From: Dendrobates tinctorius
Lineage: Eukaryota
Reading direction: 5' to 3'
Assembly: GCF_039654945.1 (NCBI RefSeq)
Contig: NW_027361722.1
Span: 17,298,001-17,362,000, forward strand
Length of the DNA stretch: 64,000 bases
Part shown: positions 392 to 59,051 of the stretch, in pieces
Layout of the letters: each line of letters begins with the position of its first letter
How positions within the stretch are numbered: the stretch's first letter is position 1
Notes under the pieces: model-generated
What the model was told of the DNA's origin: nothing
The model's database searches: none
Seen by the model: only the letters and a program-made list of their open reading frames with translations
Program-made: the position numbers and the translations under genes

Positions 392-3300
392 ATGGATCTG
401 CTGCATAACTTGGCAGATCAAGTGTCCAGTTTGACGCAGATGGCGCAGGACTTTTCTGTGAATCATCAGTCATGTCTCAGACCCTCTTACAGAAAAAACT
501 GACTGAGACTATTAAGACCATGCAGGGAAACACCTCTCATATTGTTTGTCCACCAGGTGACTCTGTAGATGTTATTTTGCACTCTCCTGAACCCTCAGTT
601 AAACTTCCTGACACATTTTCTGGCGAAAAAGATACATTTCATATATTCAAGGAGAGTTGTAAATTATGGTTTTCTCTTAGACCCTGATCGTCTGGGGATG
701 AGACTCAGCAGGTGGGGATTGTTATCTCCTTACTTAGGGAGGGTCCCCAATCCTGGGCTTTTTCGTTGCCCCCTACTGCGCCTGAACGGATGTCGGTAGA
801 TAGGTTCTTTGAGGCCCTAGGACTTATCTATGACGAACCGGACCGTGTTAGGGTGGCAGAGGACACTATTTTGGGTCTGGGGCAAGGGAAGCACTCAGCC
901 GAATGGTACAGCTCCGAATTTCATCGATGGTCCACTGAGGTGTCCTGGGACGACTCTGCACTGAGATGTCTGTTCAGGAAGGGACTGTCGGATTGCTTGA
1001 AGGATGCTCTGGCTCTCCATCCACCTCCCAGTTCATTGGAGGAGGCTATGACTCAGGCTATCCGTATGGATCGGAGACTGCGGGAGAGAGGTGTTACTCA
1101 GCGAGGGGTTCCGTTTTTCCCTGCTAACCCTGATGTTTTGCTTCCATCTGAACCTATGGAGGTGGGAGCCACCAACCCCCAGGAGAAAGAGAGGAGACGG
1201 CGACGTGATGGAAAATTGTGTTTTTACTGTGGAGATCCCGGACATTGGAAAAAAGACTGCCCCTCCTGTCCTCCGACTAACAAGCGGCTGAATCTGGGTG
1301 ATAATCGTGGAGGTCACCCAGACTCTCAGGTACCTTTTTCTTCCTTTTCAAGAGTACTGCTAAAGGTGGAACTTGGTGTTGAGAACGGCTTTTTCCATAC
1401 TTCGGCTTTTGTAGACTGTGGGTCATCCCTGAACCTGATTGACTCTAAGCTGGTGGCTCGCTGTAGATTGGGGACAGTTAGGTTGGGGACTCCCTTAAAA
1501 ATTGTGGCTATTGATTCTACACCACTCACTAAGGATGGTCTCCATTTCAGTTCTAAAGAATTTACCCTCAGGGTGGGGGCCCTACACCAGGAGCGCATGT
1601 CATGCTTTGTTTTGGATAACCTCCCTGCTGGCCTGGTGTTAGGGTTTCCCTGGTTGCAACGGCATAACCCAGTTATTGACTGGGGGTCCCGGGATATTGT
1701 TAAATGGGGACCTGGGTGTTCTGAAAATTGTCTTGCTACTGTGTCTATGTCATCCGTCAACCTGGAAGGTGTTCCGGAGTACCTAAAGGGTTTTAAGGAT
1801 GTGTTCTCCGAAAAGGAGGCTGAGGTTCTACCACCACACCGCCCATTCGATTGTGCCGTGGATCTTGTTCCCGGTGCCAAATTGCCCAAAGCCCGGCTGT
1901 ACAATCTCTCCGGCCCTGTGCGAGCTGCTATGAAGGAGTATATCTCTGAAAGCCTCCGTAAAGGGCATATACGGCCATCTGTCTCTCCCGTGGCAGCAGG
2001 GTTCTTTTTTGTAAAAAAGAAGGATGGTGGTTTACGCCCATGCCTCGATTTTCGAGAACTGAATAAAATAACCATAAGAAACGCCTACCCTCTCCCACTG
2101 ATACCTGATTTGTACAATCAATTGACGGGGGCCAGGTGGTTCTCTAAGTTGGACCTCAGGGGAGCATACAATCTCATCCGTATGCGGGAGGGGGATGAAT
2201 GGAAAACTGCGTTTCTCACCTCTGAGGGTCTGTTTGAAAATTTGGTTAGGCCCTTCGGTTTGACTACCGCACCAGCGGTATTCCAGAATTTCATTAACCA
2301 TGTTTTTTCTGATTTTACTGGACGTTTTGTAGTTGTTTATCTTGACGATATACTTATATATTCTTCTGATAGACAAAGTCATATGGGTCATCTTCATGCG
2401 GTTCTCCAGAGGCTCAGGGAGAACTCACTCTTTGCCAAATTGGAGAAGTGTTCATTTTTTACTCAAGAAGTGTCCTTTCTAGGGGTCATCCTGTCCGCTG
2501 AGGGGTTTCGTATGGACCCTAGGAAGGTACAGGCCATTGTGGATTGGGTGCAACCCAGAGATCTCAAGGGTCTTCAGCGATTTCTGGGTTTCGCCAATTA
2601 TTATAGAAAATTCATCAAGGGGTTCTCTCAAGTGGTCAAACCCCTCACTGATCTCACCCAAAAGGGAGCGGATCTTAAAAACTGGTCAGCTCCAGCTGTG
2701 GTGGCGTTTTCTTTGTTAAAAGAACGTTTCATGACTGCTCCGGTACTGGTGCAACCTGACTTGTCTAAACCATTCATCGTAGAAGTGGATGCCTCTGAGG
2801 TGGGAGTGGGGGCTGTGTTGTCCCAGGGGCCCATCACATTAACTAACTTAAGACCCTGTGCCTTCTTTTCTAAAAAATTTTCCTCTGCTGAAAGGAATTA
2901 TGATGTGGGTAACCGAGAGTTGTTGGCCATTAAATTGGCTTTTGAAGAATGGAGGCATTTTTTGGAGGGGCTGTCCATCGTATCACTGTCATTACAGATC
3001 ACAAGAATCTGTCTTACATCGAATCCGCCAAACGTCTTACTCCGAGACAGGCAAGGTGGTCACTTTTTTTTTCCCGATTTCAGTTTTCCATCACTTTCAG
3101 ACCAGGTTCCAAGAATGTGAAGGCGGATGCCTTGTCTCGCAGCCTAGATCCGGTATCGCCTCCGGAGCCTCCTTCCTCCATTCTTCAGCGCGGGGTGGTG
3201 GTGGCTTTGGTGTCCCAGAGATTGGAGCAGGAGATTCGTGAGGCCCAATCTCTTGCTCCCCCGTCCATACCTGAAAATAAGCTCTTTGTGCCTGTCCAGT

Positions 3301-4589
3301 ATCGGTTAAAAGTGCTTCGGGAGTTCCACGACTCAGCTCTGAGTGGGCATCCAGGAATCTCGGCCACTCGTAAAGCCATCACTAGGCTGTTCTGGTGGCC
3401 CTCGTTGACTTCTGACGTCACTGGTTTTGTGTCCTCCTGTGAAACTTGTGCCCGCGCTAAAGCCTCCCACAACCGGCCGGCCGGGGAATTGGTGCCACTG
3501 CCACTTCCGGATAGACCGTGGACTCACCTGTCCAAGGATTTTATCACCGATCTCCCACCCTCTAATGGCAAAACCGTGATCTGGGTAGTTGTGGATAGGT
3601 TCAGCAAACAAGCACATTTTGTACCCTTTAAGGGCCTTCCTAATGCTGAGACTCTATCTGGGCTGTTCATTGAGCATGTGATTCGGTTGCATGGTGTGCC
3701 TGTCAGTGTGGTGTCTGATAGAGGGGTGCAATTCGTGTCAAAATTCTGGAGAGCTTTTTGTAAAAGGCTGGGCATCAGTCTGACCTTTTCATCGGCCTAC
3801 CATCCCGAGACCAATGGTCAGACTGAAAGGACCAATCAGTCTTTAGAGCAGATCCTGCGGTGTCTTGTCACATCCAGACAGGATGATTGGTGCTCTATGA
3901 TACCTATGGCGGAATTCGCCTTCAATAATCGTGTCAATCAGTCTACTGGTACTCCTCCTTTCTTCTGCAACTACGGGTTTCACCCTCATTTTGGTGAATT
4001 CTCCAGACTAGATTCGGAGTGTCCAGGGGCTGATTTAGCCTTTTTGCTGTTGGAAGAGGTTTGGAGGGAAGTTCAGAGAAACATTGGGGAGGCTCAGGGC
4101 AAATATAAGTTTTTTGCAGATAAACGACGCTCGGTGGGGCCGGCTTATCAGGTGGGGGATAAGGTATGGTTATCCACCAAAAACATAAGGCTGAGAATTC
4201 CCTCTGCTAAGTTGGGTCCCAAGTTTATTGGTCCGTATGAGATTTTAGAGGTGATTAATCCTGTGGTCTTTCGCCTGCGGTTGCCTCCGTCATTACGGAT
4301 TCCTAATGTGTTCCACAAAGCGCTTCTGAAGCCCTCGGTGCCTTCCTCTGACGAGTCTCCCTCGCACCCGCCGCCTGTTATGGTAGATGGGCAGACCGAG
4401 TACGAGGTGGAACAGGTGGTGGATTCTCGTATGCTCCGTCGTTCACTTCAGTACTTGGTCCATTGGAAAGGATACGGTCCTGAGGATCGGTCATGGGTGC
4501 CGGCGCGTTCGGTCCATGCGGATCGGTTGGTCCGGGCCTTTCACGCTCGTCATCCAGGGAAGCCTGGGGGTCCAGTGGCCCCCCATTGA
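392..4589 (+). pseudogene. gag-pol polyprotein (gag, CCHC knuckle, protease, RT, RNase H, integrase, chromodomain), interrupted
   Basis: ATG 392, frameshift near 470, TGA 685-687. ORF 712-3120 has CFYCGDPGHWKKDC, AFVDCGS, YLDD, VDAS. Frameshift near 2965 into ORF 2949-4589 with HHCC zinc finger, D..D..E core, GPY motif and chromodomain YEVEQVVDSR..QYLVHWKGY. Confidence 0.95.
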
Positions 4590-34945: not shown

Positions 34946-36181
34946 CCATCCAGTTCGTCCTTATGGGTCCAGCTGCCGCGAGTCCTTTCGTCTGTTCTGT
35001 AGTGGCACCTGGTGTTCATCGGGAGCCAATCTAACCTCACCATCAGAGGTTCAAGTGAACAGTCCGGTGCTCGTTACGCCCCTCCAGGCTCTCCGCGGTC
35101 CGAGGCACAGTGGTTCCAGAAGCCACGTCCGTGACACAGTGTAATATAATATGATGATTGCAATATATTAAGAGGATAAAAGCTTTCTTANNNNNNNNNN
35201 NNNNNNNNNNNNNNNNNNNNNNNNNNNNNNNNNNNNNNNNNNNNNNNNNNNNNNNNNNNNNNNNNNNNNNNNNNNNNNNNNNNNNNNNNNNNNNNNNNNN
35301 NNNNNNNNNNNNNNNNNNATTTTCTTTTTTTAGTATTACTGTGTGTGTAACTGTCTGATCTAAATCACATATCAGAATACATATTCCACATGGTGATGGC
35401 TGAAGCAGAAATAAAATCAAAATGGCAGAATCAATGATTTTTTAATAATTTTTGCCTCACCCCCAAAGAATGTATTAAAATGAGATCAGAAAGTCGTATG
35501 GACCCCAAACTGGTAATGATAAAATCTGCAGCTCGCACTTCAAAAGACAAGTCCTGACTCCTGATACATCTCCATTCAATGGTTTTAAATTTTGGAAGAT
35601 GAGGAGGAAAAATCCAGAGCGAAGATAAAGAGGAGCACATTGGAGCCGGCCCTGGAGGGTTGATGGGAGCTGTGTGCATGTAATCAGTCTGCGATTCATA
35701 TTCAGAAACAATGAATTCTTTATTAATAAACATATACAACAGAGGTTATCATGTGTGTATTCAAGTTCACGAGTCTGGGCCCAAACAATGCCCACGTCCC
35801 GTCACATTTCACATTCTGATACGGCCCGACATTGTGTGTTCTCATCAGGGCATTAATAATGAACGGCTTCCAGGGGTCACAAAACACATTGTGCATCCCA
35901 AACGCTTAATAACCTAGTTCCATATCTCAATGGGAGGGATCTGGAGCTACAGGCTCTGTCTGATATTACAGCTTCAACTGAAAGGGGATGAGCTGCAGTA
36001 CCAGACACCGCCTTTGAGCAGAAGTGGCGCTGTTTCTGATTTTTTTTTTTTAAAAGTTCCCTTTTTGCAAATTTTCAAACAATTCCTTTAAGGAATTGTC
36101 CAACTCTGAGAACATTTTTTTTTGTAATTTAAATGCATATATTTGGGGCTAAAGTTCATTTTTCCAATCCAGTTAAATTAA

Positions 36182-38932: not shown

Positions 38933-40066
38933 TAATAATAATAATAATAATAATTTTTATTTATATAGCGCCAACATATTCCGCAGCACTTTACAATTAA
39001 GCGGGGACATGTACAGACAATAAATTCAATACAAGTTAAGACAATTCAAACAATAACATTAGGAGTGAGGTCCCTGCTCGCAAGCTTACAATCTACAAGG
39101 AAATGGGGGGACACAGTAGGTGAAAAATGCTTGTTAATTCAGGTCTGGCAATTATAATAGGGATTTTCATATAAAGCTGCATGATCCGGTCATCAGCCCG
39201 TGTGTTTAAGTGCAATAGACAAGTATCAAGTGCAGTTATCATGTGCATGAAGGGTGTGGAGACAGATGAATAGTAGGGTGCAGATTCAGAATAATATTTG
39301 GAAGGAGGGAACAGGGCAAGGTTAGCTTGCTGGGTAGTTGATGTGGTAGGCTTGTTTGAAGAGATGGGTTTTCAAAGCGCGCTTGAATAGGTCAGGGCTA
39401 GGTATCAGTCTGATCGCCTGGGGAAGTGCATTCCAGAGAGCTGGAGCAGCACGAGAGAAGTCTTGGAGGCGGAGGTGCGAGGTTCGGATTACGGGGGATG
39501 TTAGTCTTAGGTCATTTGTAGAACGGAGGGCACGTGTAGGGCGATAGACAGAGATGAGAGAGGAGATATAAGGCGGTGCAGAACAGTGGAGAGCTTTGTG
39601 GGTGAGAGAGATGAGTTTATACTGGACCCTGTAGCGAATAGGTAGCCAGTGTAATGACTGGCACAAGATGGAGGCATCGGTGAAGCGGCTGGACAGAAAT
39701 ATGACCCTGGCTGCCGCATTCAAGATGGATTGGAGAGGAGAAAGTTTGGTAAGAGGGAGACCGATCAGAAGAGAGTTGCAGTAGTCCAGGCGAGAATGAA
39801 TAAGAGCGACAGTAAGAGTCTTAGCAGTTTCAAAGGTGAGAAAAGGTCGGATTCTGGAGATGTTTTTAAGATGCAGGTGACAAGAGCGACTGAGTGATCG
39901 GATGTACGGAGTAAAGGAAAGTTCAGTGTCGAATATGACCCCAAGACAGCGGGCATGCTGCTTGGGAGTTATGGTTGAACCCTCCAGGGTTATTTCGATG
40001 TTAGGTAGAGTGAGGTTAGTAGAGGGGAGAAACACAAGAAGTTCAGTTTTAGAGAGATTTAGTTTC
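38933..40066 (-). mobile_element. L2 LINE, 5'-truncated, young (ORF2 C-terminus 39322-40035 open)
   Basis: KLNLSKTELL..ARCLGVIFD..LIHSRLDYCNSLLIGLP..LHWLPI..FKRALKTHLF, then 3' UTR and (TTA)n tail. Confidence 0.95.
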
Positions 40067-42912: not shown

Positions 42913-43229
42913 AGCCCCCATACACATTAGACTAATCAACAGGTTTGGCCAACAGCCGTGGACACCAACTGACTGCCAGGGTCACCAGGCGACTGATGTT
43001 GACGAGAGATGTCAATGGCGCATGTCTGATTTTATGCTGCCAATCACATTGTTCTCCCGGAGAAAAGCTGCCGACTGATGTGTCAGTTGGTGGCTTTCTC
43101 ATAAAGAACACAGGAGCACCCAGCCGAGTGAGCGCTCCTGTGTATGGATGAGGAGGACAAGATGGCAGTGGCCAAACAATTGGCCAAAGCATCGTTCAGC
43201 CAAAATCCATGTAATGTGTGTGGCCTGCC
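42913..43229. mobile_element. MITE with TAA TSD
   Basis: AGCCCCCATACACATTA..TAATGTGTGTGGCCTGCC; related copy at ~47889-48208. Confidence 0.65.
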
Positions 43230-43304
43230 TAAAAACAGAAACTCATAGATTTTAAATGTGTAGTAGCATAATGACGCGCTCTCCAGAACTGAATCTCCAA
43301 GTGT

Positions 43305-45119
43305 TTCTCCCAGTAACTTAGGCTGTATGTCAGCTTTGTGTGTTTTTTTCCCAGTAAAATAGGCTGGATGTGAGGTCTTTGCATCTCTCCCTGTAATGCA
43401 GGCTGGATATGAGGTCCGTGTATCTCTCCCAGTAATATAGGCTGGATGAGAGGTCTATGTGTTTCTCCCAGTAATATAGGCTGGATGTGAGGTCTGTGTG
43501 TCTCTCCCAGTAATATAGGCTGGATGTGAGGTCTATGTGTCTCTACCAGTAATATAGACTGGATGTGAGCTCTGTGTGTCTCTACCAGTAATATAGACTG
43601 GATGTGAGCTTTGTGTGTCTCTCCCAGTAATATAGGCTGGATGTGAGGTCTGTGTGTCTCTCCCAGTAATATAGGCTGGATGTGAGCTCTGTGTGTCTCT
43701 CCCAGTAATATAGGGTGGATGTGAGGTCTGTGTGTCTCTCCCATGAATATAGGCTGGATGTGAGGTCTGTGTGTCTCTCCCAGTAATATAGACTGGATGT
43801 GAGCTCTGTGTGTCTCTCCCAGTAATATAGGCTGGATGTGAGCTCTGTGTGTCTCTCCCAGTAATATAGACTGGATGTGAGGTCTGTGTGTCTCCCAGTA
43901 ATATAGGCTGAATGTGAGGTCTGTGTGTCTCTCCCAGTAATATAGGCTGGATGTGAGCTCTGTGTGTCTCTCCCAGTAATATAGGCTGGATGTGAGATTT
44001 GTGTGTCTCCCAGTAATATAGGTTGGATGTGAGGTCTGTGTGTCTCGCCCAGTAATATAGGCTGGATGTGAGCTGAGTATCTCTTCCAGTAATATAGGCT
44101 GGATGTGAGGTCTATGTGTCTCTCCCAGTAATATAGGCTGGATGTGAGCTCTGTGTGTCTCTCCCAGTAATAAAGGTTGGATGTGAGCTCTGTGTGTCTC
44201 TCCCAGTAATATAGGCTGGATGTGAGGTCTGTGTGTCTCTCCCAGTAATATAGGCTGGATGTGAGGTCTGTGTGTCTCTCCCAGTAATATAGGCTGGATA
44301 TGAGGTCTGTGTGTCTCTCCCGGTAATATAGGCTGGATGTGAGCTGTGTGTGTCTCTCCCAGTAATATAGGCTGATGTGAGCTCTGTGTGTCTCCCGGTA
44401 ATATAGGCTGGATGTGAGCTCTGTGTGTCTCCTGGTAATATAGGCTGGATGTGAGCTGTGTGTGTCTCTCCCAGTAATATAGGCTGGATGTGAGCTCTGT
44501 GTGTCTCCTGGTAATATAGGCTGGATGTGAGCTGTGTGTGTCTCTCCCAGTAATATAGGCTGATGTGAGCTCTGTGTGTCTCCCAGTAATATAGGCTGGA
44601 TGTGAGGTCTGTGCGTCTCTCCCGGTAATATAGGCTGGATGTGAGGTCTGTGTGTCTCTCCCAGTAATATAAGCTGGATGTGAGCTGTGTGTGTCTCTCC
44701 CAGTAATATAGGCTGATGTGAGCTCTGTGTGTCTCCCGGTAATATAGGCTGGATGTGAGCTCTGTGTGTCTCCTGGTAATATAGGCTGGATGTGAGCTGT
44801 GTGTGTCTCTCCCAGTAATATAGGCTGATGTGAGCTCTGTGTGTCTCCCAGTAATATAGGCTGGATGTGAGCTCTGTGTGTCTCTCCCAGTAATATAGGC
44901 TGGATGTGAGGTCTGTGTGTCTCTCCCAATAATATAGACTGGATGTGAGCTCTGTGTGTCTCTCCCAGTAATAAAGGTTGGATGTGAGATTTGTGTGTCT
45001 CCCAGTAATATAGGTTGGATGTGAGGTCTGTGTGTCTCTCCCAGTAATATAGGCTGGATGTGAGCTGTGTATCTCTTCCAGTAATATAGGCTGGATGTGA
45101 GCTCTGTGTGTCTCTCCCA
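43305..45119. repeat. 39-bp minisatellite (roughly 47 copies, with 36-38 bp variants)
   Basis: Unit tctctcccagtaatataggctggatgtgaggtctgtgtg. Confidence 0.98.
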
Positions 45120-45520
45120 TCTATGTCAATCAAAGGTGAACCATGTAATACACCCAGACATTCATATTATTTAAGCCATTAATGCTGTATAGTGGTCAGT
45201 CATTTAAGTGATCGTGCTTACATTGAGGAAAGAAAGAGATAAATTAATGAGATCTGTCATAAAAAAAATTACAAAATTCAGCAACCAAAGTGAGCGACCT
45301 GTGGGGCCTGAAAGTGGCAAATAAATAAGTTGGTGCTACAAAATCCTGTGATTTCACAATGATGTCACCGGCCTGGTATTGTATTTGGGGGAGAAGTAGA
45401 AGCTGGAGAACGTGACTTATGTCCTTCAGGAATTATTAGTAGTCAATAGATCACTGATACAAATTCCAGAGAAATGGTGAAAGTGAACAGATAATATAAT
45501 CTCATCTACATCCAATTTAA

Positions 45521-49827: not shown

Positions 49828-51523
49828 TTTTCCCATTTGCCAAGACTGGGAGCAGACTCAAGATCTCTAATATAGAGGAGCCAGAGTCACATTTTCATTT
49901 ATATAGTAAGAAAAATCATTAAGCTTTGAAGATGGAGCTTTTTTTTTGGGGGGGGGATTTGGACTTTAATGACTGTGATCAATTTGAAAGATTTATTCAA
50001 CCTATGCAGAACAAAGTGGAAAAAAGTTTAAAAAAAAGTCTAATATAACAAATTAAATGTTTTTCCCTCTCCCCATTTGTCTCCAAAACTTACTTACATT
50101 TTTAATGCTTTATACCTCTTTTTTATTGTAAAATTTTGGTCTATTTTTTTCACATCTGAAGCACAAGTGTGACACAATCTTTTAAAAAGCTCTGATCATG
50201 TAAATTGGATTCAATATCTACTTTTAATCCCCTTTTGGGAAAATTTTGAAATAATCAATTCGTTTTAATGTTTTTGTGATACTTTTTTTTTTCTATTTCT
50301 AATTCTACAAGCATTGATAGACTTTTGGTAAACTGTCAAGTCAGAGTTAAGCCTGTCTCAAAGAATTAAAAAAAATACAGTAAAAAAATATCAAACCCTA
50401 TCTAAAAGTCTAAAAAAAATAAAAATAATCAAACCTAATCTAAAAAAGTATATTAAAATTAATACAAATATTAAAAACCTATCGGAAAAATGAAAAATAT
50501 AAAACAAAATAAAAATATCAAATCCTCTAAAAATGTATAAAAAAAAAAGTGATATTGTCACTGTAACTTTTTTTTTTTTTTATCTCCACTTATTCCTTTG
50601 TTGGAATTTTCTGTTCAAAAAGACAAAAGTAGAAGGTTTGTAACCGATTGAAATGATTTTAAATGATTTGAAATCTATCTGCCGCTACCTCTTTCTATGT
50701 TTTTCTTTCCTTTTGTGCTGCATAGCACTGACATTTTTGAACACTACTGGAAGTTACATCAGAAATCTAGGAGGAAAATTACAGCCGATGGGAAGAAAAA
50801 AAAAATTGGTGACTATTACCGGTACATTACGAAACAGAAAAAAAAAATGATCTGGTCACGTAGAAGAGTGAGAGATTATAATAGTATCGCACAAAAGAAA
50901 AACGGAGAAATATGTGGGTTTCTTGTGAGCAGTAACCAGTTTCTAAGGGTCTAAAAATTTTTTAAAAAGGTTAAAATTCTAATTTTTTAAAATCATTTTA
51001 AATTACGTATTCTAGTCATAACATTATATTGTTTTGAATTATTAGAATTGTATTTTTTATGTTGAAATGATAAAAATATTTTGTTAGAGATTTCTTTTAG
51101 GTTATTAATTAATTATTCAGTTACAATGTAAGCACATGTTATTTTTTTTTTTTAACATTTTTCCAAGGAATCGATTTATGACTGAGGTATATGCTATGCA
51201 AGTTTTTATGGATCGATATTTATGAATGCTAATAGACTAAAAAAAAAAAAAACTTACATTTTTCCATAACTCTTAATTTTTCACCAACTTTAAAGGGAAA
51301 ATTCTTGGCATTCATTTAGCTCACTAAAACTAGAACAATGTAATATTTCTAAAAAAAAATTTTTAAAAATGTGAAAACATACAATGCAGCGTATCCCGGG
51401 TAGCACTTTTCTTTACATCATCCATTCTGTCTTCTTAAACCTGTGGCACGTCAGAATCCAAATCGAGTTGACTGTTTGGCGTACCTTGCACTATTTTGCG
51501 TTACTAGTTTCATGGCTTTCCGT

Positions 51524-53299
51524 TCATACGGCTAAATCGTCGGAGCGAGCCCGGCTACTTGCCTTACTTAATCTACTCAAGGATCTAGAATCCGGAATTA
51601 ACTCGAAACTTAGTAAAGGCAGTTCAGGAATCGGAGGTTCTGCTTCATAATCATCTGGTTTATCAGACAAAGGTTGGGGGAATCCTTGTCCTAGAGGGAG
51701 GTGTTCAGATCTGGAATTATCTGAAAGTGCTCTAGACGGTGCACGTTCATATGGTACCCGGTCAAAATTGGTGGGGTTGTTTTCATCTAAGACTTGCTCT
51801 GAAGTTACTGTGGAAGGAATATTTTCTAGCGGTGGATCAAAGAGAGAAGGGGTTGCTTGTGAAGGGGTTTGCTCAGCGGAGGCATGATCTGAAGCAGCCC
51901 GAGATAAAGCGTGGTATGAGGGTGCACACTCAAAAGGATCATGGTCAGAAGCTGCTCGGGATACAGCCCTTTCAGAGGAAGCGCGCTCAAATGGGGCATT
52001 TTCAGATGGTGCTCGAGATGGGACTCTCTCTGAAGTCACATGTTCAGAAGTTGCCCGAGATAGAGCCCGCTCTGAGGGTGCACGCTCAGAAGAAGTATGC
52101 TCAGAATTAGCCCGGGAAATGGCTCGCTCTGAAGGTGCTCTTTCGGAGATCACATTGTTGGAAGATAATTTTACAAGGGAAGGAAAAGCACGTTCAGAAA
52201 GTGCACGCTCAGAGGGGGCACGCACCGAAGGGGCTCGCTCTGAAGGCACTTGTTGTAGAGTTTCAGCCGCTTGAACTTTCACCATCTCCTGTTCTTCAGC
52301 TTGACGATACGAGGGCAGAGATTCATCGTAGGCCTTCGACATGTCTTCTAGGAGGCCTGTGCTGCTTTTTTCATAATTATTAAAGTGAGATGGAAGAGGA
52401 CTAGTTTCTAATCCAACCTCGGTCATTGGATAAAAATGGGAGACAACCTTTTCTTCTTCCAGTAGCTTATACCCTTTAGATTTTGGAATGGAGGAAATGG
52501 CAATGGAGTGCAATGGTTTCTGGGAAACTTCTCCAAGCAGTGAATTTGTTTGGTGATCTGTACTCCTCCGAAATGCAAAGCGAATCTTTTTCCAGCCAAG
52601 ATGACTGATCTCCACCACATTCAGAAAGAGTGAGACTGCAGCTACAGCTAACATGAACATAATAAATACAGTTTTCTCAGTAGGCCTGGAGACAAAACAG
52701 TCTACGATGTTTGGGCAAGGCCAACGACTGCAACGATATAAGGGAAGGATCCTAAAACCATACAGGAAATATTGTCCCACCACAAAGCCCACCTCAAAAA
52801 TTGTTTTGAAGATAATGTGACAGATGTAGGTTCTTAGGAGAGTTCCTTCCAAGCGAAACTTCTTAGTCCCTTTGGTACTGGTTTCCTTGGTGGTCCTAAT
52901 GCTCCCTTGATCGGGAGCAAGCGGCAACCTTTCTTCATTAATCTCCTGCTGCCGACTCATTTCTGCTTCCTCTCTCTCCTTTCTTTTCTCTTCCATCCGA
53001 ACGTGATGTACAGCGTGACCCACGTACACCAGGGACGGTGTGGAGACAAAGATGATCTGTAGGACCCACAGTCTGATGTGAGACAGAGGGAAAGCCTCAT
53101 CATAGCAGACATTCTCGCAACCGGGCTGCTGAGTGTTGCACACAAAATCAGATTGTTCATCCCCCCAAACGAACTCGGCAGCAGTTCCCAAGATGAGGAT
53201 CCGGAAAATGAACAGAACCGTCAGCCAGACCCTGCCAATAACGGTGGAGTGCTCATTCACCTCTTCTAAAATATTCCCTAGGAAACTCCAGTCTCCCAT
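51524..53299 (-). CDS. gja8: Gap junction alpha-8 protein (connexin 50), single coding exon, 591 aa with expanded tail
   Basis: N-terminus [38 protein letters not shown], six extracellular Cys, [14 protein letters not shown]-terminus [17 protein letters not shown]; splice acceptor at 53310-53311, 10 nt before the ATG. Confidence 0.97.
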
Positions 53300-54865
53300 T
53301 CTCTACAGCCTGTAGAAATAAAATAAAAACACAAAACCATGGACAAATATTAGTGAATTCCCAAATAAAGCTGTAGATAAAATAAAAAAAAAAACCTATC
53401 TAACAGAAGTAGAATAATTACAATACATTTATGCCGATGATAATACATTCATATTTTATCCTAAATTGTTGTATGTCGTATCCGTGATCTCAGATCTCAG
53501 ATCATGAAATCCTCAGATCTAGAGTTCTCCTAAACCGGACTTTCTACACCACATGGATCTATGGATCAGAAGGACCCAGGATACGAATAGTTAAACGTAG
53601 GTACAGTAGGCGCGTCTGAAAAAGACATCCCAGTATTAGTATTATCAATAGTATTATAATTACTAGCTTCTTCTATATTACTGCTGCCACTTGTAATTAA
53701 TAATAACTCACAAAACAAAAAAAGACAAAAAAACACAATAACTAATATATGTGACATAACGCCAGCATTTTCAATAAAGGAACCTGATAACTTAAAAGAA
53801 GCTTACAAGAGCTGTAACATTTGTTTAACTCCCAACAATAGAACATTGAAGCTTCATATTATAGGTAAAAGAAAATTACAACAAAATTTATAAAAAAAAA
53901 AGTAAAACAAAAAAAAATGGAAAGAGAAAGCATTTTTTTTAGAGAGAAAAAGCATAAAGGAACTAAGATGCTAACCAGTACATACGGCATAACGCATTTT
54001 GAATGAAGTAACTGGATAACTTAGAAATGTAGAAGATCTGTAACTTTTTCATTCACAAAGGAACCATGAAACGCCGTGTTACTTTTTTCAAAACGATGAC
54101 ACTATGTCACATGCAGTGGTTAGTCTATTAGCTTTATTGTGTTTGGTTTTTTTTTAATAGCTAAAAACTGTTTTCTGTTAACTATTATTTATTATTATTA
54201 ATAATGTACTTATATTAATATAATATATGTGTGTGTATACATACTATATGTGACATAATTGCATCATTTTGAATAAAGTGTTGCTATAAAAGTTTTCTAT
54301 ATTTTTTCCCTTTTATTTTACAACTATAGTTATGTTTATGTACATATATATATATTCTCCTAGATACAATGCTTTCCATTTGCTTTTTCTTCTATATTTT
54401 ATTTTATGAATATAGCTATGTTAATTTGTACATATATGTAAAGATATACATAATACTTTCCATTTATTATTTTCCTACAGTGAATTTCTTTTTTTATCAC
54501 TTTTTACTTTTTAAATATTGCTAGGTTGAANNNNNNNNNNNNNNNNNNNNNNNNNNNNNNNNNNNNNNNNNNNNNNNNNNNNNNNNNNNNNNNNNNNNNN
54601 NNNNNNNNNNNNNNNNNNNNNNNNNNNNNNNNNNNNNNNNNNNNNNNNNNNNNNNNNNNNNNNNNNNNNNNNNNNNNNNNNNNNNNNNNNNNNNNNNNNN
54701 NNNNNNNNNNNNNNNNNNNNNNNNNNNNNNNNNNNNNNNNNNNNNNNNNNNNNNNNNNNNNNNNNNNNNNNNNNNNNNNNNNNNNNNNNNNNNNNNNNNN
54801 NNNNNNNNNNNNNNNNNNNNNNNNNNNNNNNNNNNNNNNNNNNNNNNNNNNNNNNNNNNNNNNNN

Positions 54866-58864: not shown

Positions 58865-59051
58865 TAGGGGTTTGGGTTAGAGTTAGGGTTAGTTAAGGGG
58901 GTTTAGGGCTAGGGTTANNNNNNNNNNNNNNNNNNNNNNNNNNNNNNNNNNNNNNNNNNNNNNNNNNNNNNNNNNNNNNNNNNNNNNNNNNNNNNNNNNN
59001 NNNNNNNNNNNNNNNNNNNNNNNNNNNNNNNNNNNNNNNNNNNNNGGGTTA
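58865..59051. repeat. Telomere-like (GGGTTA)n tract spanning an assembly gap
   Basis: ttagggttagttaaggggg..agggtta before the gap, gggtta after it. Confidence 0.7.

What the first reader, a model, noticed from the sequence alone, without database searches (positions are those of the whole stretch)
51720..52250. Connexin 50 tail expanded by a phospho-motif repeat array
Seen: residues ~351-527 are built from 5-aa SERAP units grouped into ~19-aa repeats ([76 protein letters not shown]). I count 17 R-x-x-S motifs. The codons are diverged, the frame is intact and the terminal DDLAV is kept. Established: human Cx50 is 433 aa with an acidic tail that controls gating, ZO-1 binding and age-related cleavage; R-x-x-S is a basophilic kinase/14-3-3-type motif. 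Inference: an old, selected, lineage-specific multisite phosphorylation module on a lens gap-junction channel.
Basis: partly seen in the sequence, partly recalled or inferred. Interest (0 to 1): 0.72.

Follow-up and report, generated by a model that had tools for sequence, protein, structure and literature searches.

The report
Amphibian connexin-50 tail repeat array
The lens gap-junction gene gja8 (connexin 50) of this poison frog has a serine-rich SERAP repeat array in its cytoplasmic tail; all frogs and salamanders sampled share it, it is at least as old as their common ancestor and moderately conserved, and its proposed role as a phosphorylation module is plausible but untested.

Summary
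Window 51524-53299 (minus strand) is one uninterrupted 591-aa gja8/Cx50 ORF. Coordinates 51720-52250 encode residues 350-527. These consist of degenerate 5-aa SERAP units grouped into four 19-aa (57-nt) super-repeats, with 17 R-x-x-S motifs and a terminal DDLAV.

The array is not specific to this genome. All 25 frog Gja8 proteins (573-670 aa) and all 3 salamander proteins (516-529 aa) have it. Lungfish, coelacanth and gar have a 22-23-aa linker at that place, and amniotes have a different, glutamate-rich insert there. No caecilian Gja8 was retrieved.

The duplications are old: all array Ser codons are TCN with diverged third positions, and synonymous sites between units are near saturation. 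The array is under moderate purifying selection, with dN/dS 0.19-0.39, against 0.005-0.02 in the channel core.

Serine is the best-kept residue. The motif arginine decays to Q, H or C through CpG transitions, and salamanders mostly carry SEHAP. No canonical 14-3-3 or PKA RRxS motif is present.

Phosphorylation, and transcription in this species, are not shown. The proteins are already annotated publicly, but I found no description of the array in the literature. I rate it a new variant of a known kind, of moderate interest.

The parts
51524..53299 (-). Complete gja8 / connexin 50 coding sequence, 591 codons plus stop, in a single exon
   Evidence: ORF list and translation; Pfam Connexin and Connexin50; 91-94% identical to annotated gja8 of Ranitomeya and Phyllobates
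53310..53330 (-). Polypyrimidine tract and AG splice acceptor (AG at 53311-53310), 10 nt upstream of the ATG. This fits the usual GJA8 layout of a non-coding exon 1 followed by an exon holding the whole CDS.
   Evidence: Read directly from the sequence; the exon layout of GJA8 is established knowledge
52592..53293 (-). Channel core, residues 3-236 (four transmembrane helices, two extracellular loops, cytoplasmic loop)
   Evidence: Pfam PF00029 covering 3-236; dN/dS 0.005-0.019; helices predicted at 20-45, 72-120, 151-180 and 207-243 in a low-confidence model
52301..52489 (-). Connexin50-specific proximal tail domain, residues 271-333
   Evidence: Pfam PF03509, 8.7e-27; dN/dS 0.06-0.19 for residues 237-345
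51878..52243 (-). Core SE[RH]AP repeat array, residues 353-474: 27 Ser, K+R 17 equal to D+E 17 (net charge 0)
52148..52186 (-). Non-repeat island [12 protein letters not shown] (residues 372-384) inside the array. Its 'SNN' landmark occurs in every non-dendrobatid frog sequence read in full (8) and in Phyllobates, and is deleted in Ranitomeya.
52091..52147 (-). 19-aa super-repeat 1 (residues 385-403)
   Evidence: 57-nt spacing; 15/19 aa identical to repeat 2 but only 70% nt identity, pS 0.66
52034..52090 (-). 19-aa super-repeat 2 (residues 404-422)
51935..51991 (-). 19-aa super-repeat 3 (residues 437-455)
51878..51934 (-). 19-aa super-repeat 4 (residues 456-474), the most decayed copy ([10 protein letters not shown])
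51752..51877 (-). Non-repetitive, poorly conserved spacer, residues 475-516
   Evidence: Per-column identity to other frogs is mostly 0-0.5 and gaps are frequent
51719..51751 (-). Outlying repeat pair [11 protein letters not shown] (residues 517-527), well conserved in frogs
51527..51709 (-). Distal tail, residues 531-591. It includes the block [18 protein letters not shown], in which 15 of 18 positions are invariant and 2 more nearly invariant across the 34 aligned vertebrate Gja8, and the PDZ-type terminus DDLAV (51527-51541).
   Evidence: Invariant and nearly invariant columns R572-L589 in the 34-sequence alignment. Cx50 needs this motif and ZO-1 to form channels (abstract of PMC3226470, seen).
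52220..52225 (-). Donor-like GTGCGT at codons 359-360 (phase 0). This is the place where predicted 365-aa 'isoform X2' models of two ranoid frogs leave the ORF. No use of it is shown here.
   Evidence: P0029 and P0030 end in ...SVRAPSWL; no joints in the laid contigs

Best explanation
Shown: this is the gja8 (connexin 50) gene of a dendrobatid frog. Its cytoplasmic tail carries an ancient in-frame tandem expansion of a 15-nt unit encoding S-E-R-A-P, organised into 57-nt (19-aa) higher-order units. The expansion sits in the linker between the Cx50-specific proximal tail (...LPSYRQ) and the near-invariant, PDZ-binding end (...[17 protein letters not shown]). It arose no later than the common ancestor of frogs and salamanders. 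It has kept positional orthology since then and evolves under moderate purifying selection that preserves Ser best, then Arg, Ala and Glu.

Inferred: the array is a disordered, charge-balanced stretch with a serine every 4-5 residues. Its most likely role is as a multisite substrate for basophilic lens kinases. PKA and PKC-gamma are already known to act on Cx50 in amniotes, and R-x-x-S-x-R fits a PKC-type consensus. Graded phosphorylation would turn a net-neutral linker into a strongly acidic one. That would tune tail-dependent properties in differentiating fibre cells, such as plaque assembly through the ZO-1-binding end, turnover, pH or chemical gating, and the timing of proteolytic removal. 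Later the tail would be clipped off as fibres mature, as it is in mammals.

My confidence is about 0.95 in the evolutionary and anatomical part and about 0.4 in the phosphorylation mechanism.
For: Identity: Pfam Connexin plus Connexin50; named gja8 orthologues at 66-94% identity.

Distribution: the array is present in all 25 frog and 3 salamander Gja8 proteins. It is absent from lungfish, coelacanth and gar (linker 22-23 aa) and from amniotes.

Age: all Ser codons are TCN with scrambled third positions. Paralogous units show pS 0.35-0.85 but pN 0.15-0.29. The units align one-to-one from Ascaphus to neobatrachians around the SNN landmark.

Selection: NG86 dN/dS for the array is 0.19-0.34 and GY94 ML gives 0.22-0.39, against 0.005-0.019 for the core. 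Neutrality is rejected at P=2e-6.

Motif: acceptor Ser identity is 0.87, Arg 0.73, variable positions 0.29-0.42. There are 13-26 RxxS per frog tail and 6 RxxSxR in this protein. The core array has net charge 0 and 27 Ser. The model predicts no secondary structure from residue 244 to 591 (a weak model).

Context from papers: Cx50 is a phosphoprotein. PKA phosphorylates S395 and CK2 phosphorylates S364 of the chicken orthologue. PKC-gamma is required for Cx50 Ser/Thr phosphorylation. The C-terminus is cleaved during fibre maturation (PMC5267330). Xenopus gja8 mutants develop lens opacity (PMC12592064). GJA8 marks newt lens epithelial cells (PMC12822573).
Against: No phosphorylation data exist for any amphibian Cx50. 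The motif Arg is not strictly kept: 32 of 48 replacements are Q, H or C, the products of CpG transitions. Salamanders have 5-10 RxxS against 8-12 HxxS. So either the kinase logic differs there or Arg is dispensable. Pro at position -1 and Glu at +1 are not optimal for PKA-type kinases (my own knowledge). There is no RRxS and no 14-3-3 motif. Constraint at dN/dS around 0.3 is ordinary for disordered linkers kept for length or composition. Among close dendrobatid relatives the array shows 17 nonsynonymous to 8 synonymous changes (pN/pS 0.78). That is not distinguishable from neutrality (P=0.35) and is above omega 0.3 (P=0.018). Transcription in this species is not demonstrated, because the run types were only guessed.
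Confidence: 0.5

Rival explanations
1. The array is a compositionally constrained disordered spacer. It is kept for length, flexibility, solubility and charge balance, for example to set the reach of the ZO-1-binding terminus or the 'particle' in particle-receptor gating. Serine phosphorylation plays no special role, and the R-x-x-S count is a by-product of copying one unit.
For: dN/dS of 0.2-0.4 is typical of disordered linkers. Tail length varies widely (165-317 aa) by gain and loss of whole units without loss of the gene. Arg drifts freely to H, Q or C, and salamanders are mostly SEHAP. K+R exactly equals D+E in the core array. The RxxS excess follows from the repeat itself.
Against: Ser is the single best-conserved residue (0.87, against 0.66-0.69 for Glu and Ala) and keeps its 4-5-residue spacing over divergences at which synonymous sites are saturated. 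A pure spacer would tolerate Ser to Thr, Ala, Gly or Asn more freely. Cx50 tails elsewhere are known kinase targets (PMC5267330).
Confidence: 0.33
2. The array is a near-neutral slippage product. It expanded once and is kept in frame only because the essential PDZ-binding end lies downstream. Its amino-acid sequence is effectively free, and it is tolerated because the tail is proteolytically removed in mature fibres.
For: Among close dendrobatid relatives pN/pS is 0.78, not different from 1. Unit indels are frequent. Residues 475-516 are barely conserved.
Against: Between frog families neutrality is rejected (P=2e-6; omega 0.19-0.39). The repeat pattern is still readable although dS exceeds 1 between the window and Nanorana or Ascaphus. 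Paralogous units keep 11-15 of 19 residues with pS up to 0.85. No sampled frog or salamander has lost the array.
Confidence: 0.12
3. The array is usually absent from the functional protein because it is spliced out. A donor inside the array would yield a tail-less Cx50 like the 365-aa 'isoform X2' models.
For: Two ranoid frogs (Lithobates pipiens, Hyperolius riggenbachi) have predicted isoforms that end identically (...SVRAPSWL) inside the array. The same donor-like G|GTGCGT is present at codon 359 of the window.
Against: The full-length form is the primary model in every species. Purifying selection acts on the array and on the distal end in the long frame. No contig from three runs shows a joint in the array, and one 1781-nt contig is collinear with the part of the CDS that was laid (51521-52399). 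No matching 'AG-TGG-Leu-stop' acceptor exists in the 51.5 kb downstream in the window.
Confidence: 0.05

Closest known systems
Amniote Cx50 (human/mouse GJA8, sheep MP70, chicken Cx45.6) C-terminal tail
   Same: It is the same gene and has the same position between the Connexin50 domain and the near-invariant [17 protein letters not shown] end. The tail is cytoplasmic. Phosphorylation (PKA, CK2, PKC-gamma-dependent), ZO-1 binding and cleavage in mature fibres are documented (PMC5267330; abstract of PMC3226470).
   Different: The amniote insert is 57-83 aa, 31-37% Glu, non-repetitive and has 0-1 RxxS. The amphibian insert is 165-317 aa, built of SE[RH]AP units, about 16% Ser, with a net-neutral core array. 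The two look like independent expansions of an ancestrally short (22-23 aa) linker.
Gja8 of lungfish, coelacanth, gar, sturgeons and sharks
   Same: These are orthologues with an almost identical channel core, Connexin50 domain and terminal motif.
   Different: They have no array. The linker is 22-23 aa and the proteins are 365-390 aa, which probably represents the ancestral state.
Cx43 (GJA1) C-terminal domain
   Same: It is a disordered connexin tail carrying many Ser phosphosites that control trafficking, gating and degradation, and it ends in a ZO-1-binding motif (PMC5267330).
   Different: It is not a tandem repeat, and its sites are individually distinct and mapped to specific kinases. 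No such mapping exists for the amphibian array.
Tandem phospho-repeat platforms such as the RNA polymerase II CTD heptads or RS domains (analogy from general knowledge only)
   Same: They are short Ser-containing units repeated many times in a disordered region, where the number and charge of phosphates, rather than any single site, could carry the signal.
   Different: There is no sequence relationship. The unit is SERAP, the context is a membrane channel, and phosphorylation is unproven.

Membership tests
Connexin family (Pfam PF00029) | Full-length match to the connexin four-transmembrane core with the conserved extracellular cysteines | tested here: met
   PF00029 at 6.3e-102, residues 3-236, covering profile positions 1-225 of 225. 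C54, C61, C65, C190, C195 and C201 are invariant in the 34-sequence alignment.
GJA8 / connexin 50 orthogroup | Connexin50-specific tail domain (PF03509) | tested here: met
   8.7e-27 (94.1 bits against a cutoff of 25), residues 271-333
GJA8 / connexin 50 orthogroup | Closest named relatives are GJA8, not GJA3 or GJA1 | tested here: met
   Among the 120 listed hits, every one that a source names by gene is gja8, Cx50 or CXA8, except one fused Atractosteus CXA1 record. Amphibian orthologues are 66-94% identical over 100% of the query.
GJA8 / connexin 50 orthogroup | C-terminal class-II-like PDZ-binding end (…SRARSDDL-x-V/I) | tested here: met
   The protein ends in [12 protein letters not shown]581-L589 are invariant columns and V591 is nearly invariant.
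GJA8 / connexin 50 orthogroup | Whole CDS in one exon preceded by a splice acceptor | tested here: met
   Uninterrupted ORF; pyrimidine tract plus AG 10 nt before the ATG
GJA8 / connexin 50 orthogroup | Lens expression and a lens phenotype | not testable with these tools
   Not shown for this species, because the run kinds were only guessed. In other amphibians, Xenopus gja8 mutants show lens opacity (PMC12592064) and GJA8 marks newt lens epithelial cells (PMC12822573).
Multisite phosphorylation module | Conserved phospho-acceptor residues at fixed spacing | tested here: met
   Acceptor Ser identity is 0.87 across 21 non-dendrobatid frogs, against 0.52 for the array as a whole. Ser-Ser spacing of 5 occurs 15 times and spacing of 4 occurs 9 times. 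Aligning repeats inflates this figure somewhat.
Multisite phosphorylation module | Conserved kinase-recognition residue (Arg at -3) | tested here: inconclusive
   Arg identity is 0.73 in frogs. However, 32 of 48 replacements are Q, H or C, and salamanders have more HxxS (8-12) than RxxS (5-10).
Multisite phosphorylation module | Phosphate actually found on the sites, and a functional consequence | not testable with these tools
   No amphibian lens phosphoproteome was found in the paper searches.
14-3-3 binding site (mode I RSxpSxP, mode II RxxxpSxP) | Match to either consensus | tested here: not met
   There are 0 matches to either pattern in the tail of the window protein and of 12 other vertebrate Gja8 (7 amphibian).
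Classical PKA site (R-R/K-x-S/T) | Dibasic residues at -3/-2 | tested here: not met
   There are 0 matches within the linker and array. Only the conserved distal end (RARS) is PKA-like.
Coding tandem repeat (minisatellite-derived) | Head-to-tail copies with a constant period that is a multiple of 3 | tested here: met
   Start-to-start spacings are 15 and 57 nt, and copies are 60-84% identical. TRF detects only the least diverged 59 nt.

The most novel reading that the evidence does not exclude
Tetrapods expanded the same short Cx50 tail linker twice. Amniotes gained a constitutively acidic Glu-rich insert. The ancestor of frogs and salamanders gained a net-neutral SERAP array whose roughly 20-30 serines let kinases dial in an equivalent acidic charge. 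On this reading the amphibian lens has a kinase-controlled, graded version of a tail property that is hard-wired in amniotes, for example for pH or chemical gating, or for the timing of tail cleavage during fibre maturation or metamorphosis.
Probability: 0.2. Interest if true: 0.65.

Novelty: new variant of a known kind. Interest (0 to 1): 0.42.

Why it matters
Cx50 is one of the two fibre-cell gap-junction proteins that keep the lens transparent, and its tail controls channel assembly, gating and age-related processing. Frogs and salamanders carry a 165-317-aa repeat-built insert exactly where amniotes carry a short acidic one. This offers a natural experiment on what that linker does. It is also easy to test: Xenopus oocytes are the standard connexin expression system, and Xenopus gja8 mutants already give cataracts. 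The finding also gives a clean example of a coding tandem repeat that has stayed recognisable since at least the frog-salamander ancestor, with serine kept and arginine eroding through CpG decay. The gene itself is ordinary and already annotated. The value lies in the undescribed tail architecture, not in a new kind of system.

Tried and rejected
(1) Tandem Repeats Finder alone under-reports the array, finding only 59 nt. Seeded repeat search and codon-level reading were needed.

(2) DNA of the closest annotated relative could not be fetched. The one look-up tried (Ranitomeya variabilis) failed because the assembly file is too large, and the other dendrobatid proteins also lie on contigs of hundreds of Mb. 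dN/dS therefore rests on Leptodactylus, Engystomops, Nanorana and Ascaphus.

(3) The sequencing runs holding the stretch are of unknown kind ('RNA?' is a guess) and are stored as contigs. They show collinearity and substitutions in close relatives but not transcription. I laid only the tail and 3' flank (50900-52400) and kept the highly conserved channel core out of the reads tool.

(4) The AlphaFold2 model is poor overall (mean pLDDT 42.8). Its lack of structure in the tail is only weak support for disorder, so I made no fold search.

(5) A search for the 3' exon of the ranoid 'isoform X2' (AG-TGG-Leu-stop) downstream in the window found nothing.

(6) Plus-strand ORFs 51739-52110 and 52135-52383 are antisense read-throughs of the stop-poor repeat. 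The third-position divergence pattern fits the minus-strand frame.

(7) P0121, the only non-connexin hit to the array (E=5e-3), is an unrelated low-complexity SEK/SERAP protein from an AT-rich organism.

(8) The 14-3-3 and classical PKA readings of the motif were rejected.

(9) Caecilian Gja8 was sought in three word-based protein searches and one paper search without result. I did not use the large profile search because it returns no names and clusters at 50% identity.
Full report
**Observation.** The finding's coordinates lie inside one uninterrupted minus-strand ORF, 51524..53299, of 591 codons. Window 52250 corresponds to residue 350 and 51720 to residue 527. Each is built from 5-aa S-E-R-A-P-like units plus one 4-aa S-R-A-x unit, and the protein ends in DDLAV. 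I count 17 R-x-x-S in residues 341-530 and 19 in the whole protein. Of the 20 arginines in residues 346-530, 17 have Ser at +3, whereas composition-preserving shuffles give 3.6 +/- 1.65 and never more than 12 in 20000. That excess is the arithmetic consequence of copying one unit, so it shows a repeat rather than 17 independent selections. At the DNA level the copies lie 15 and 57 nt apart and are 60-84% identical. Tandem Repeats Finder reports only 52188-52246.

**Gene identity and anatomy.** Pfam gives Connexin (6.3e-102, residues 3-236) and the Connexin50-specific domain (8.7e-27, residues 271-333). The best named relatives are 'gap junction alpha-8 protein' of Ranitomeya variabilis (94%), R. 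imitator (92%) and Phyllobates terribilis (91%). A pyrimidine tract and an AG lie 10 nt before the ATG. This fits the usual GJA8 layout, with the whole CDS in one exon. The block [18 protein letters not shown] near the end is almost unchanged across 34 aligned vertebrate Gja8 proteins, with 15 of its 18 positions invariant. [quoted passage not shown]

**Distribution.** The array is not peculiar to this genome.
- All 25 frog Gja8 proteins retrieved are 573-670 aa long, from Ascaphus, Bombina and Xenopus to hyloids and ranoids. They carry 10-26 R-x-x-S in the tail (13-26 in all but Hymenochirus, which has 10).
- The three salamander proteins are 516-529 aa and carry the same kind of array, mostly as SEHAP. 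They have 5-10 RxxS and 8-12 HxxS.
- A search scoring only residues 345-530 found only frog and salamander Gja8, plus one unrelated low-complexity protein.
- Lungfish, coelacanth and gar have just 22-23 residues between LPSY and the SRLSK block.
- Amniotes have 57-83 residues there, but these are 31-37% Glu and have 0-1 RxxS.

The ancestral linker was therefore probably short and was expanded independently, and differently, in amniotes and in amphibians. No caecilian Gja8 appeared in any of three searches. The origin can therefore be dated only to at or before the frog-salamander ancestor, roughly 300 million years ago by commonly cited divergence estimates (my own knowledge, not tested here).

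**Age of the duplications.** All 34 array Ser codons are TCN, split TCT 15, TCA 9, TCC 9 and TCG 1, and four other frogs have almost no AGY Ser codons either. The units therefore share one origin and have since diverged at third positions. Between the four 19-aa super-repeats, nucleotide identity is 60-74% and synonymous differences reach pS 0.35-0.85, while pN stays at 0.15-0.29. Across species the units align one-to-one around a non-repeat island (window residues 372-384). Its 'SNN' core is present in every non-dendrobatid frog sequence I read in full (eight species) and in Phyllobates. Ranitomeya has deleted it. Length differences arise from gain or loss of whole units.

**Selection.** I used genomic CDS from Leptodactylus, Engystomops, Nanorana and Ascaphus. 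dN/dS by region was as follows.

| Region (residues) | NG86 dN/dS | GY94 ML dN/dS |
|---|---|---|
| Channel core (1-236) | 0.005-0.015 | 0.008-0.019 |
| Proximal tail (237-345) | 0.06-0.17 | 0.10-0.19 |
| Array (346-530) | 0.19-0.34 | 0.22-0.39 |
| Distal end (531-591) | 0.09-0.26 | 0.12-0.17 |

For the nearly gap-free Leptodactylus-Engystomops pair, neutrality in the array is rejected (P=2e-6). The array is thus under purifying selection, but 15-40 times weaker than in the channel core, which is a level common for disordered linkers.

Contigs from three public runs of two very close relatives (95-99% identity) are collinear with the tail. They show no indel inside the coding part and no joints. 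Of the 29 substitutions listed, 10 are synonymous and 19 nonsynonymous. Within the array the split is 8 synonymous to 17 nonsynonymous, giving pN/pS of 0.78. This is not distinguishable from neutrality (P=0.35) and is higher than omega 0.3 (P=0.018). It could reflect recent relaxation, segregating slightly deleterious variants or low-depth contig errors. I cannot tell which.

**What is conserved.** The table gives identity to the window residue across 21 non-dendrobatid frogs.

| Position | Mean identity |
|---|---|
| Acceptor Ser | 0.87 |
| Arg at -3 | 0.73 |
| Ala after Arg | 0.69 |
| Residue after Ser | 0.66 |
| Second x position | 0.42 |
| Non-SERAP residues | 0.29 |

Aligning a periodic sequence inflates these values. 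Even so, a readable pattern that persists while dS exceeds 1 is itself evidence of constraint. Arginine is the weak point. At columns that hold Arg in at least one of five frogs, 32 of 48 replacements are Gln, His or Cys, the products of CpG transitions in CGN codons. This explains the SEHxx, FECAP and AEQTP variants in the window and the SEHAP-rich salamander arrays.

The core array (residues 353-474) has K+R 17 equal to D+E 17, 27 Ser and few hydrophobic residues. The tail has no RSxSxP or RxxxSxP (14-3-3) and no RRxS (classical PKA) motif. It has 17 R-x-x-S/T, 11 S/T-x-R/K and 6 R-x-x-S-x-R, which are PKC-like or generic basophilic patterns.

The structure model predicts four membrane helices and no secondary structure from residue 244 to the end. 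Its overall confidence is low (mean pLDDT 42.8), so it is only weak support for disorder.

**Expression and splicing.** Transcription in this species is not shown. The run kinds were only guessed and the data are contigs. One 1781-nt contig begins at 51521 and matches collinearly up to the end of the laid stretch (52399). Its length projects it to about 53301, so it would coincide with the CDS to within 3 nt at both ends. That looks more like a capture or CDS-limited product than a natural mRNA end. In other amphibians, Xenopus gja8 mutants have lens opacity and fibre-cell defects (PMC12592064). GJA8 also marks newly formed lens epithelial cells in the newt (PMC12822573). Predicted 365-aa 'isoform X2' models of Lithobates pipiens and Hyperolius riggenbachi both end with ...SVRAPSWL, so they leave the ORF at a Val-Arg codon pair inside the array. 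The same donor-like G|GTGCGT exists at codon 359 of the window (about 52225), but no matching downstream acceptor was found. This remains a lead, not evidence that the array is spliced out.

**Mechanism.** What is shown is an ancient, in-frame, moderately constrained, serine-periodic and charge-balanced repeat in the Cx50 tail linker. My preferred functional reading, at about 0.4, is a multisite substrate for basophilic lens kinases, in which graded phosphorylation converts a neutral linker into an acidic one. Cx50 is a phosphoprotein, with PKA and CK2 sites mapped in the chicken orthologue, PKC-gamma required for its Ser/Thr phosphorylation in mouse, and tail cleavage during fibre maturation (PMC5267330). 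The main rival, at about 0.33, is a spacer kept for length and composition, with no special role for phosphate. A near-neutral slippage product held in frame by the downstream PDZ motif is less likely, at about 0.12, given the between-family dN/dS. Routine removal by splicing is unlikely, at about 0.05.

**Comparison and novelty.** The gene is a clear member of the GJA8 orthogroup, and the proteins are already annotated in public databases. I found no description of the amphibian tail array in the searchable literature. That includes a broad survey of connexin evolution, which holds neither 'repeat' nor 'caecilian' and whose four GJA8 mentions do not concern the tail (PMC7914757; other searches). 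Many subscription-journal papers are outside that library, so an earlier description cannot be excluded. I class this as a new variant of a known kind. Interest is moderate: a lens-connexin specialist would find the size, age and regularity of the insert notable, and it is easy to test, but it does not reveal a new kind of system.

**Limits.** Four things are missing: caecilian data, DNA from the closest relatives, proof of transcription in this species and any phosphorylation data. Runs of N in the window (35191-35318, 54531-54865, 58918-59045) were left untouched.

Noticed in passing
protein searches, no window coordinates: No caecilian Gja8 of 325-1034 aa appeared in any of three word-based searches (whole protein, array only, Connexin50 region), although frogs, salamanders, lungfish, coelacanth and amniotes all did. 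Caecilians have reduced eyes, so gene loss, strong divergence or missing annotation are all possible.
   Followed up: partly
window 52220-52225 (-); proteins P0029, P0030: Predicted 365-aa 'isoform X2' of gja8 in Lithobates pipiens and Hyperolius riggenbachi ends identically (...SVRAPSWL) inside the array. The same donor-like G|GTGCGT exists at codon 359 here. No matching acceptor was found in the 51.5 kb downstream in the window.
   Followed up: partly
linker between LPSY and SRLSK in vertebrate Gja8 (window residues about 332-569): Amniotes carry a 57-83-aa, 31-37% Glu insert at the same place where amphibians carry the SERAP array. Lungfish, coelacanth and gar have only 22-23 aa there. These look like two independent expansions of one linker.
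   Followed up: partly
window 51521-52399 laid (projected by its length to about 53301), run X2: A 1781-nt public contig from a close relative would match the CDS to within 3 nt at both ends, going by its length. This suggests a capture, amplicon or CDS-limited source rather than a natural transcript. The run kind is unknown.
   Followed up: no
window 712-4589 (+): Two overlapping long ORFs carry gag, zinc knuckle, reverse transcriptase and RNase H domains (802 aa), and integrase, SH3 and chromodomain (546 aa). This is a Ty3/gypsy chromovirus-type LTR retrotransposon copy with largely open frames. It is described only and was not analysed further.
   Followed up: partly
window 43229-45133 (-) and 39322-40035 (-): ORFs of 634 aa and 237 aa have no Pfam match at E<=0.001. 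They were not examined further.
   Followed up: partly
window 35191-35318, 54531-54865, 58918-59045: Three runs of N (128, 335 and 128 bases), which are assembly gaps or masked stretches. None touches gja8, and they were left as they are.
   Followed up: no
protein P0121 (385 aa, ENA): An unrelated Lys/Asn-rich protein carries SEKVQ/SERAP pentapeptide repeats. This is a convergent low-complexity match to the array (E=5e-3).
   Followed up: partly
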